The position numbers and the translations under genes are program-made. A DNA stretch of 35,817 nt from Octopus bimaculoides (lineage: Eukaryota), in NCBI RefSeq assembly GCF_001194135.2, contig NC_068988.1, forward strand, positions 7,863,583 through 7,899,399, read 5' to 3'. The notes below the pieces were generated by a model. It was not told the origin of the DNA. It worked only from the letters and a program-made list of their open reading frames with translations, and ran no database searches. Shown piece after piece: positions 5,323 through 5,855 of this stretch. Each line of letters begins with the position of its first letter. Position 1 is the first letter of the stretch.

Positions 5323-5462
5323 CCTTTCTACTCTAGTTACAAGGCCCGAAATTTCTTTTTGGAGGGGGAGAGCAGTCGATTAGATGGACCCAAGTACGTA
5401 ATTGGCACTTAATTTATCGACCCCGAAAGGATGAAAGGATGAAAGGCCTGCTTGCCGCCTTT
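5323..5462 (-). mobile_element. SINE family A, internally deleted, tail type 1
   Basis: Head remnant aaggcggcaagcagg joins directly to core cctttcatcc(tttcatcc)tttcggggtcgataaattaagt; tail ...cttgtaactagagtagaaagg. Confidence 0.85.
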
Positions 5463-5479
5463 CAAGTAATCTTTTCTTA

Positions 5480-5710
5480 TTTCTTTATTGCCCACAAGGG
5501 GCTAAACATACAGGGGACAAACAAGGACAGACAAAGGGATTAAGTCGATTACACCGACCCCAGTGCGTAACTGGTACTTAATTCATCGACCCCGAAAGGA
5601 AGAAAGGCAAAGTCGACCTCGGCGGAATCTGAACTCAGAATGTAACGGCAGACGAAATACTGCTAAGCATTTCGCCCGACATACTAATGTTGCTGCCAGC
5701 TAGCCGCCTT
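5480..5710 (-). mobile_element. SINE family A, full length, tail type 2
   Basis: Minus strand: aaggcggctagctggcagcaac (A-box-like), gagttcagattc (B-box-like), core cctttcttcctttcggggtcgatgaattaagtaccag, tail ...gtttagccccttgtgggcaataaagaa. Confidence 0.92.
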
Positions 5711-5723
5711 TTTTTTTCTTTGT

Positions 5724-5841
5724 GCTTACAGCACCTAGGTTTCCCAAGCGGTCACCCATCTAAGTACTAACTAGGCTCGATGTTGCTTAACTTCGGTGAT
5801 CAGACGAGAACCAATGCTTTCAACGTGATATGGCCGTAAGC
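5724..5841 (-). pseudogene. 5S rRNA retropseudogene (full-length 5S copy with A-rich 3' linker)
   Basis: Minus strand reads GCTTACGGCCATATCACGTTGAAAGCATTGGTTCTCGTCTGATCACCGAAGTTAAGCAACATCGAGCCTAGTTAGTACTTAGATGGGTGACCGCTTGGGAAACCTAGGTGCTGTAAGC (118 nt). This is a typical metazoan 5S sequence with terminal helix GCTTACGGC/GCTGTAAGC and box A and box C motifs. It is a single copy followed by A-rich sequence instead of an oligo-T terminator, with apparent CpG-type decay. Confidence 0.93.
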
Positions 5842-5855
5842 CATATCAAGTAATA

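What the first reader, a model, noticed from the sequence alone, without database searches (positions are those of the whole stretch)
5461..5854. 5S rRNA-tRNA-SINE chimera with no Pol III terminator: a candidate nascent 5S-headed SINE
Seen (minus strand): full 5S (5841 to 5724), an A-rich linker, then a complete SINE-A (5710 to 5480), bracketed by ATTACTTGA repeats. The 5' junction ATATG-GCTTAC mimics the target ATATGGCATTAC (microhomology). There is no TTTT on the minus strand from the 5S start until 5216, so a transcript from the 5S internal promoter would read about 625 nt through two SINE units. Known: SINE3 families have 5S heads, and AmnSINE1 combines 5S-derived, tRNA-derived and Deu-domain parts. 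From memory, the SINE-A core cctttcatcctttcggggtcgataaa.taagtaccag resembles the Deu/Nin domain. Inference: an independent cephalopod origin of the same 5S + tRNA + Deu/Nin architecture, either a one-off RT template switch or a member of an unannotated family.
Basis: partly seen in the sequence, partly recalled or inferred. Interest (0 to 1): 0.8.

Follow-up and report, generated by a model that had tools for sequence, protein, structure and literature searches.

The report
5S rRNA–SINE fused retrocopy in octopus
A complete copy of 5S ribosomal RNA, a short A-rich spacer and a complete octopus SINE lie between one pair of direct repeats at a site hit by retroelements at least three times; this is most likely a reverse-transcriptase "template-switch" fusion of a known kind, and nothing here shows that it has multiplied into a new SINE family.

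Summary
On the minus strand there is a full-length 5S rRNA (5841-5723, Rfam 105.7 bits), a 12-nt A-rich linker, and a full-length Octopus SINE (5710-5471). Perfect ATTACTTGA repeats flank them. The first T4 run downstream lies 625 nt away.

All four ATTACTTGA copies in the window lie in one 780-bp cluster, which is bracketed by a 17/18 repeat. The cluster holds three tandem insertions: SINE-B1, 5S+SINE-A, and SINE-B2. It is an insertion hot spot.

There is no target duplication at the 5S/SINE junction. A 15/16 16-nt repeat brackets the pair, so I favour one retroposed unit. The likely route is that the reverse transcriptase copied the SINE RNA to its 5' end and then switched to an oligoadenylated 5S rRNA. 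A second chimera in the window, SINE+SINE inside one 12-nt duplication, shows that such switches happen here.

A two-step origin is not excluded: a 5S retropseudogene first, then a SINE landing in its A tail.

I could not test whether this is a family, because no searchable collection holds octopus DNA. Published annotation already lists "SINE/5S" repeats in O. vulgaris (9.8 Mb, 4 families). "Nascent" and "unannotated" are therefore unproven. Interest is moderate to low.

The parts
6069..6085 (-). Left copy of the outer target-site duplication, AATATGCCATTACTTGA. Its last 9 nt are ATTACTTGA copy 1.
   Evidence: the repeat finder family D8: 6068-6085 against 5305-5322, 17/18 identical. Sequence read.
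5855..6068 (-). SINE type B, full-length copy B1. Its tail is ...CCAGAGTAGAAAAT and it has an internal TTTT at 5964-5961.
   Evidence: blastn and alignment to other copies in the window. T runs.
5846..5854 (-). ATTACTTGA copy 2, the left direct repeat of the 5S+SINE-A unit. With the last 7 nt of the B1 tail it forms a 16-nt repeat (5846-5861).
   Evidence: Exact pattern match. Family D9: 5846-5861 against 5462-5477, 15/16 identical.
5842..5845 (-). TATG, 4 nt of filler between the repeat and 5S position +1. With the neighbouring bases it reads ATATGGC, like the target sequence ATATGGC at 5321-5315.
   Evidence: Sequence read. That the filler was templated from the target is inference.
5723..5841 (-). 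Full-length 5S rRNA copy, with no T-run terminator after it.
   Evidence: Rfam RF00001, 105.7 bits, model positions 1-120. 33 of 34 pairs are standard. It is followed by ACAAAGAAAAAAAAA, not by T.
5711..5722 (-). A-rich linker CAAAGAAAAAAA, which runs into the AAG that begins the SINE.
   Evidence: Sequence read. The SINE 5' end AAGGCGGC was defined from 8 copies and from the O. vulgaris copy.
5471..5710 (-). SINE type A, full length. It has the head and core shared with type B, plus a type-A 3' part ending ...GGGCAATAAAGAAATAAG at 5476, then AAAAG.
   Evidence: blastn. 89% identity over positions 1-235 to the O. vulgaris copy at L121:10143-10377. Exonised copies occur in annotated O. vulgaris and O. 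bimaculoides proteins.
5462..5470 (-). ATTACTTGA copy 3, the right direct repeat of the 5S+SINE-A unit (16-nt version 5462-5477).
5323..5461 (-). SINE type B copy B2, with an internal deletion (positions 1-15 joined to the core) and a duplicated CCTTTCAT.
5306..5322 (-). Right copy of the outer target-site duplication, AATATGGCATTACTTGA. It contains ATTACTTGA copy 4.
5212..5216 (-). First run of four or more T downstream of the 5S start, and therefore the first canonical Pol III stop, 625 nt from +1.

Best explanation
The 5S-linker-SINE-A block (5845-5471, minus strand) is one chimeric retrocopy made by a LINE reverse transcriptase.

Proposed steps:
1. Target-primed reverse transcription started on the 3' end of a type-A SINE RNA at a nick just 5' of ATTACTTGA (or of AGAAAAKATTACTTGA).
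2. It ran to the very 5' end of the SINE RNA.
3. The cDNA end (...CCTT/TTT) then paired with the short A-rich tail of an oligoadenylated 5S rRNA, and the enzyme copied that RNA to its first base.
4. The product was joined to the upstream DNA with 4 nt of filler, duplicating the target.

The site is a hot spot. Two type-B SINEs entered it in separate events that reused the same second-strand cut after CTTGA.

Shown: the anatomy, the flanking repeats, the full length of both parts, the lack of a terminator, and a second chimera nearby. Inferred: the template switch itself, the A-tailed 5S donor, and the order of events. On present evidence the locus is a dead-end chimeric pseudogene, not a proven SINE source gene.
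For: - Both parts are complete and in the same orientation.
- Perfect 9-nt repeats flank the pair, 15/16 over 16 nt.
- At the inner junction, the longest flank match for the SINE alone is AAAA. Other insertions of this SINE group have duplications of 9, 12, 16-17 and 18 nt.
- The 5S copy lacks the T run of a real gene and carries an A-rich tail instead, so it derives from RNA.
- At 34911-35268, a type-A SINE joined directly to a 5'-truncated type-B SINE lies inside one perfect 12-nt duplication. This shows template switching by the same machinery in the same window.
- Template switching from a tRNA-derived SINE RNA to 5S rRNA is the published model for the composite heads of some Deu-SINEs and for HaSE3.
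Against: - Classical chimeric retrogenes are fused directly and their 3' part is usually 5'-truncated. Here there is a 12-nt A-rich linker and the SINE is full length.
- The A-rich context lets the junction be read in other ways.
- Five extra bases (AAAAG) after the usual type-A end fit a two-step origin as well as a 16-nt duplication.
- There are no population, orthologue or transcript data.
- Only one copy was seen, in a draft assembly with many gaps.
Confidence: 0.4

Rival explanations
1. The block is one copy of an already amplified composite SINE family (5S head, A-rich linker, tRNA-like/Deu-type SINE). It would be transcribed from the 5S internal promoter of a master copy elsewhere and retroposed as a unit. 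The fusion would have happened once, at the master locus.
For: - The unit structure with flanking repeats is exactly what a family member would show.
- There is no T4 run inside the unit.
- The O. vulgaris repeat annotation lists a SINE class '5S' with 9,831,953 bp in 4 families.
- The giant squid genome paper reports about 24,000 5S-derived loci, 'many likely SINEs'.
- At that density, one copy in a 36-kb window is not surprising.
- The 5S part is structurally almost intact.
Against: - There is no second copy in the window.
- None was found in any collection, but the controls show those collections lack octopus DNA.
- The published '5S' class is an automated label. It may be 5S rDNA arrays or plain pseudogenes: the one recently active '5S' family averages about 6 kb per insertion.
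- Known 5S-headed SINEs keep only part of the 5S, not a full 5S plus A tail.
- Retroposed 5S promoters are thought to depend on upstream signals.
Confidence: 0.25
2. Two independent insertions. First an A-tailed 5S rRNA retropseudogene entered the hot spot with the ATTACTTGA duplication. Later a type-A SINE landed in its A tail, with only a few A's as its own duplication. The adjacency would then be accidental, in the way left and right monomers of dimeric SINEs are thought to have met.
For: - The A-rich linker looks like a retropseudogene tail.
- AAAAG follows the usual type-A 3' end AAATAAG, which two other type-A copies lack. It could be the rest of that tail.
- SINE density is high, about 10 copies in the window.
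- This site demonstrably attracts repeated insertions.
Against: - The SINE alone would have a duplication of at most 4 nt (AAAA), against 9-18 nt in the other measurable insertions.
- The SINE would have to begin exactly at the end of the A run.
- The extra AAAAG is equally explained by a 16-nt duplication that includes the B1 tail.
Confidence: 0.27
3. Not a retroposed element at all: either a dispersed functional 5S gene (orphon) that happens to lie next to SINEs, or a misassembly of repeat-rich short reads.
For: - The 5S structure is nearly perfect.
- The window is a draft assembly with many N gaps.
Against: - There is no T-run terminator after the 5S, and an A tail instead.
- It is a single copy outside any array.
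- The nested direct repeats (9/9, 15/16, 17/18) form a coherent insertion history that misassembly would not create.
- There is no N in 5300-6100.
Confidence: 0.05

Closest known systems
LINE-mediated chimeric retrogenes, in which a small RNA is fused to a LINE, SINE or mRNA copy by RT template switching (Buzdin/Gogvadze type; U6/L1 and 5S/L1 chimeras in mammals; WEIRD-MgSINE in Magnaporthe)
   Same: - Two RNA-derived parts lie in the same orientation inside one pair of target-site duplications.
- The 5' part is a full-length abundant non-coding RNA.
- The 3' part carries the element tail that primed reverse transcription.
   Different: - An A-rich 12-nt linker sits between the parts, where classical chimeras are fused directly.
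- The 3' part is a full-length SINE, not a 5'-truncated copy.
- In mammals, 5S/L1 chimeras mostly hold truncated, antisense 5S.
- The host is a cephalopod and the partner LINE is not L1-like. The SINE tails and targets are (ATT)n-like.
5S-headed SINEs with a composite origin: SINE3/AmnSINE1-type Deu-SINEs and HaSE3 of Helicoverpa
   Same: The same building blocks appear in the same order: 5S, then the sequence of a tRNA-derived SINE with a conserved central domain. The published origin model is this same event, a template switch from SINE RNA to 5S rRNA.
   Different: - Those are families with many copies, in which only part of the 5S (the promoter region) remains and the tRNA part is partly lost or replaced.
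- Here the 5S and the SINE are both whole and separated by an A tail.
- Only one copy is known, and neither transcription nor amplification is shown.
Dimeric SINEs with an A-rich linker, such as Alu formed by fusion of free left and right monomers
   Same: The layout is Pol III-RNA-derived monomer, A-rich linker, second monomer, with the promoter in the first monomer. This comparison rests on established knowledge (Quentin 1992, listed in the references seen).
   Different: - Alu is built from 7SL-derived monomers and is a proven family.
- Here the monomers are unrelated (5S and a tRNA-like SINE), and no amplification is shown.
Plain 5S rRNA retropseudogenes
   Same: A full-length 5S copy with an A-rich tail instead of a T-run terminator, outside any rDNA array.
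   Different: The direct repeats enclose the SINE as well, and no repeat follows the A tail.

Membership tests
5S rRNA (Rfam RF00001) | Sequence and secondary structure match the covariance model above the gathering score | tested here: met
   105.7 bits against a gathering score of 38, full model 1-120. 33 of 34 pairs are standard.
Functional 5S rRNA gene | A T-run Pol III terminator directly after the 3' end, usually in a tandem array | tested here: not met
   The 3' end is followed by ACAAAGAAAAAAAAA. The first T4 run is 625 nt downstream. There is a single 5S in the 35.8-kb window.
SINE, 5S-derived (SINE3), by the SINEBase criteria | At least 60% identity with 5S rRNA over at least 60 nt, plus extra body sequence, total length under 1 kb | tested here: met
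   Full-length 5S plus a 240-nt SINE body, about 375 nt in all.
SINE, 5S-derived (SINE3), by the SINEBase criteria | [quoted passage not shown] | not testable with these tools
   There is one copy in the window. Junction scans of the metagenome, genome and viral collections were negative, but the octopus SINE head is absent there too. Protein-level searches across the junction found no copy, but the collection holds almost no octopus ORFs.
SINE, 5S-derived (SINE3) | Transcribed by Pol III from the 5S internal promoter | not testable with these tools
   The box A, IE and box C regions are present, but there is no expression data. Retroposed type 1 promoters are thought to need upstream signals.
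LINE-mediated chimeric retrocopy (template switch) | One pair of target-site duplications around both parts, and none at the inner junction | tested here: met
   ATTACTTGA is 9/9 and AGAAAAKATTACTTGA is 15/16 around the pair. At the inner junction only AAAA could be shared.
LINE-mediated chimeric retrocopy (template switch) | Parts fused directly, with the 3' part usually 5'-truncated | tested here: not met
   There is a 12-nt A-rich linker, and SINE-A is complete from its first base. The chimera at 34911-35268 does meet this feature.
Deu / Nin-DC SINE superfamily | Central domain homologous to the published Deu or Nin-DC consensus | not testable with these tools
   No reference consensus is available. 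Indirect support:
- The 21-mer TTTCATCCTTTCGGGGTCGAT and about 45 bp of the core (84-91% identity) recur in more than 120 non-cephalopod metagenome contigs under different heads.
- Octopus SINEs are published as mainly tRNA-Core and tRNA-Deu.
- Nin domains are known in molluscs and annelids.
tRNA-derived SINE (SINE2) | The head is recognisable as tRNA, with A and B boxes | tested here: inconclusive
   ARAGORN found none and the Rfam tRNA model found no hit at E<=10. The best A-box match has 2 mismatches in the consensus. The B-box-like GAGTTCAAATTCC fits only with an indel.
AmnSINE1-type composite head | A 5S-derived promoter part fused directly to a partial tRNA-derived part, with no intervening tail | tested here: not met
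   The 5S is whole, followed by an A-rich linker and then a whole SINE head.

The most novel reading that the evidence does not exclude
The block is a member, or even a source copy, of an amplifying dimeric SINE of octopuses: a whole 5S rRNA, an A-rich linker, and a whole tRNA-like Deu/Nin-type SINE, driven by the 5S promoter. It would account for part of the unexplained 'SINE/5S' fraction of octopus genomes (9.8 Mb in O. vulgaris). It would also be an independent origin of the 5S + tRNA + Deu architecture known from vertebrate SINE3/AmnSINE1, still in an unprocessed state.
Probability: 0.25. Interest if true: 0.6.

Novelty: new member of a known kind. Interest (0 to 1): 0.33.

Why it matters
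The published model for how 5S-headed SINEs arise is a template switch from a tRNA-derived SINE RNA to 5S rRNA. That model rests on comparing old, reshaped families. A locus where both partners are still whole, inside one target duplication, would be a clean snapshot of the first step, in a lineage whose genome is dominated by SINEs and reported to hold very many 5S-derived loci. If further copies exist, the family could be dated, its promoter tested and its partner LINE identified. If the locus is unique, it is simply one more chimeric pseudogene. Its main value would then be as a marker of frequent template switching and of site re-use by the octopus LINE machinery.

Tried and rejected
1. 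Other copies of the junction by DNA pattern. I scanned for AGGTGCTGTAAGC N(0-30) GGCGGCNAGCTGGCAG in metagenome, prokaryotic-genome and viral contigs and found none. The control with the octopus SINE head also found none. The metagenome hits to the core share only about 45 bp. The negatives therefore say nothing about octopus.

2. Junction copies through translated ORFs. The antisense frame found only ordinary 5S genes of other organisms. The sense frame found two annotated Octopus proteins with exonised SINEs but no 5S part. With so few SINE hits, this too is uninformative.

3. Exact look-ups of window ORFs to reach the same locus in other assemblies. None is on record.

4. Sampling octopus DNA through a transposase-like ORF. 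This gave only three 1-kb ENA contigs. One 20-kb O. vulgaris stretch (L121) was obtained and holds a single type-A SINE and no 5S.

5. Reference Deu/Nin-DC consensus or octopus 5S rRNA sequence from papers or supplements. None is held.

6. A reading in which the SINE-A 3' end CAATAAAGAAATAAG is a duplicated piece of a 5S poly(A) tail. Rejected: the same sequence ends other type-A copies.

7. A model in which 5S+SINE-A entered the empty site first, joined at ATATG|GC. Rejected: it cannot produce the ATTACTTGA found between B1 and TATG.

8. Rfam on the metagenome loci with 5S-like heads. No hit; only a 5S fragment is present.

Full report
**Observation**

- Rfam finds one 5S rRNA in the window, on the minus strand at 5841-5723. 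It scores 105.7 bits against a gathering score of 38 and covers the whole model.
- Of the 34 model base pairs, 28 are Watson-Crick, 5 are G-U and one is C-A. The copy is structurally almost intact.
- It is followed not by the T run of a real 5S gene but by ACAAAGAAAAAAAAA.
- At 5710 a SINE begins with its normal first bases AAGGCGGC, as defined from eight copies and from an O. vulgaris copy. It runs to 5471.
- Exact ATTACTTGA copies lie at 5854-5846 and 5470-5462.

**Whole locus**

All four ATTACTTGA copies of the 35.8-kb window lie within 780 bp. The chance expectation is 0.7 per window, and none of 100 shuffles reached four. Read on the minus strand, the cluster is:
- AATATGCCATTACTTGA (6085-6069)
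- SINE type B, copy B1 (6068-5855)
- ATTACTTGA
- TATG
- 5S
- A-rich linker
- SINE type A
- ATTACTTGA
- SINE type B, copy B2, internally deleted (5461-5323)
- AATATGGCATTACTTGA (5322-5306)

The outer repeat is 17/18 identical (family D8). The 5S+SINE-A pair is bracketed by a 16-nt repeat, AGAAAAKATTACTTGA, at 15/16 (family D9).

The simplest history is three insertions into one site, all sharing the second-strand cut after CTTGA. B2 came first, with a 16-17-nt duplication. B1 and the 5S+SINE-A unit followed.
- If the 16-nt repeat is a true duplication, the order was B2, B1, then the unit. The unit would then be the youngest, and the five extra bases AAAAG after the usual type-A end would be explained.
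- If only the 9 nt are duplicated, the order was B2, the unit, then B1.

I cannot decide between these two orders.

TATG plus the first two 5S bases repeats the target's ATATGGC. I read this as filler templated from the neighbouring target. That is inference.

**The SINE**

Types A and B share the first roughly 168 nt and differ in the 3' part.

Translated SINE sequence hits annotated proteins of Octopus vulgaris and O. bimaculoides. A genomic O. vulgaris type-A copy is 89% identical over positions 1-235. It has an 18-nt duplication and ends ...AAAGAAATAAG. The window is therefore Octopus DNA, and SINE-A here is full length.

Several type-B copies lie inside (ATT)n/(TAA)n arrays. ATTACTTGA also begins with ATTA. 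This suggests a partner LINE whose tail pairs with such targets. Dong-R4 elements are abundant and recently active in O. vulgaris. That link is inference.

The tRNA origin of the head was not confirmed by ARAGORN or Rfam.

**The core domain**

The 21-mer TTTCATCCTTTCGGGGTCGAT occurs in more than 120 contigs of host-associated metagenomes. Those contigs share only about 45 bp with the octopus SINE, at 84-91% identity, and carry other heads and bodies. The core therefore behaves as a central domain shared between distant hosts.

Published work classes the abundant octopus SINEs as tRNA-Core and tRNA-Deu and reports Nin domains in molluscs and annelids. I could not align the core to a reference consensus, because none is held.

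**One unit or two insertions**

In favour of one unit:
- The flanking repeats enclose both parts.
- Nothing longer than AAAA is repeated around SINE-A alone. The other measurable insertions of this SINE group have duplications of 9, 12, 16-17 and 18 nt.
- Both parts are complete to their first base.
- The same window holds a textbook chimera at 34911-35268: a type-A SINE ending at 35102, joined directly to a type-B SINE truncated at about position 50, inside one perfect 12-nt duplication.

Against one unit:
- The A-rich linker looks like the tail of a separate 5S retropseudogene.
- AAAAG after the type-A end could be the remainder of that tail.
- This site evidently attracts repeated insertions.

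I put a single unit at about 0.65 and a two-step origin at about 0.27.

For the single unit, the mechanism I favour is this. Reverse transcription of SINE-A RNA ran to its 5' end. The cDNA 3' end (complement of AAAGG) then paired with the A-rich tail of an oligoadenylated 5S rRNA. Synthesis continued to 5S position +1.

**One-off or family**

This is the question that decides the interest of the finding, and I could not answer it.
- The junction was not found in any DNA collection, but the controls show that those collections hold no octopus DNA.
- Protein-level searches across the junction and exact ORF look-ups were likewise empty and uninformative.
- The literature shifts the prior towards a family. 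The curated O. vulgaris annotation lists a SINE class '5S' of 9.83 Mb in four families. The giant squid genome paper reports about 24,000 5S-derived loci.
- These labels are automated and may cover rDNA arrays or plain pseudogenes. The one recently active '5S' family averages about 6 kb per insertion.

My split is 0.40 for a local chimera and 0.25 for a family copy.

**Pol III read-through**

The absence of a T4 run is real, but it is a general property of these SINEs, whose consensus has none. It does not show that the 5S promoter fires. Retroposed type 1 promoters are thought to depend on upstream signals and to be silent or weak.

**Comparison with what is known**

In mechanism the block works like a LINE-mediated chimeric retrogene. 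It differs from the classical ones in having an A-rich linker and a full-length 3' part.

In architecture it resembles the proposed first step towards the 5S+tRNA heads of some Deu-SINEs and towards HaSE3. It fails the family features of those elements: the 5S is not reduced to a promoter fragment, there is an A tail between the parts, and no copy number is known.

Its layout also recalls dimeric SINEs with an A-rich linker, such as Alu.

**Verdict**

This is a new example, in a cephalopod, of a known kind of event. It sits in a notable three-hit insertion site. It would become more interesting only if the junction proves to be multi-copy or transcribed.

Noticed in passing
window 34899-35280 (+): Bipartite SINE chimera. 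A type-A SINE (34911-35102, lacking positions 82-124) is joined directly to a type-B SINE that starts at about position 50 (35103-35268). Both lie inside one perfect 12-nt duplication, TAGAACCACCTG (34899-34910 and 35269-35280).
   Followed up: yes
window 5306-6085 (-): Insertion hot spot. Three retroelement insertions lie in tandem at one site, all sharing the cut after CTTGA. The nested repeats are 9/9, 15/16 and 17/18. The order of the last two events is not resolved.
   Followed up: partly
window 26904-27371, 29346-29706, 18645-18932: Type-B SINE copies lie inside long (TAA)n/(ATT)n arrays, for example 70 and 49 repeat units, with ATT repeats on both sides. This suggests a microsatellite-like SINE tail and a partner LINE that targets such repeats (Dong/R4-like?).
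   Followed up: partly
L033:556-700, L038:2023-2165, L043:2636-2777 (also L026, L012, L040, L039, L035): In host-associated metagenome contigs (host not identified) there is a multi-copy SINE-like element with a hybrid head. The head is a tRNA 5' part with an A box, then a 5S rRNA segment (about positions 38-92, the promoter region), then a tRNA B box. It is followed by the same conserved core as the octopus SINE. Rfam does not call it 5S.
   Followed up: partly
L001-L120: The 21-mer TTTCATCCTTTCGGGGTCGAT of the octopus SINE core occurs in more than 120 contigs from about 30 JGI metagenomes (Ga0056133, Ga0126328, Ga0209363 and others), inside SINE-like repeats with tRNA-like heads. This is evidently animal host DNA in symbiont metagenomes.
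   Followed up: partly
window 11743-12485 (-): Two overlapping ORFs in different frames (154 and 181 aa) resemble a DDE transposase (PF13358 in the hits, 57-62% identity). This looks like a frameshifted Tc1/mariner-type transposon remnant.
   Followed up: partly
window 6126-6192: A 17-nt unit, GAATCGAACACTGCCAA, is repeated about 3-4 times just upstream of the cluster. On the minus strand it reads GTTCGATTC, which is B-box-like. Its origin is unknown.
   Followed up: no
P0014 (O. vulgaris, L121:10001-10351) and P0015 (O. bimaculoides): Annotated Octopus proteins whose C-terminal parts are translated SINE sequence. These are either exonised SINEs or annotation artefacts.
   Followed up: no
window 5964-5961 (-): Copy B1 has an internal TTTT, where the consensus has CCTTTC. 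This is a Pol III stop inside the element, so B1 is not a likely source of read-through into the 5S.
   Followed up: no
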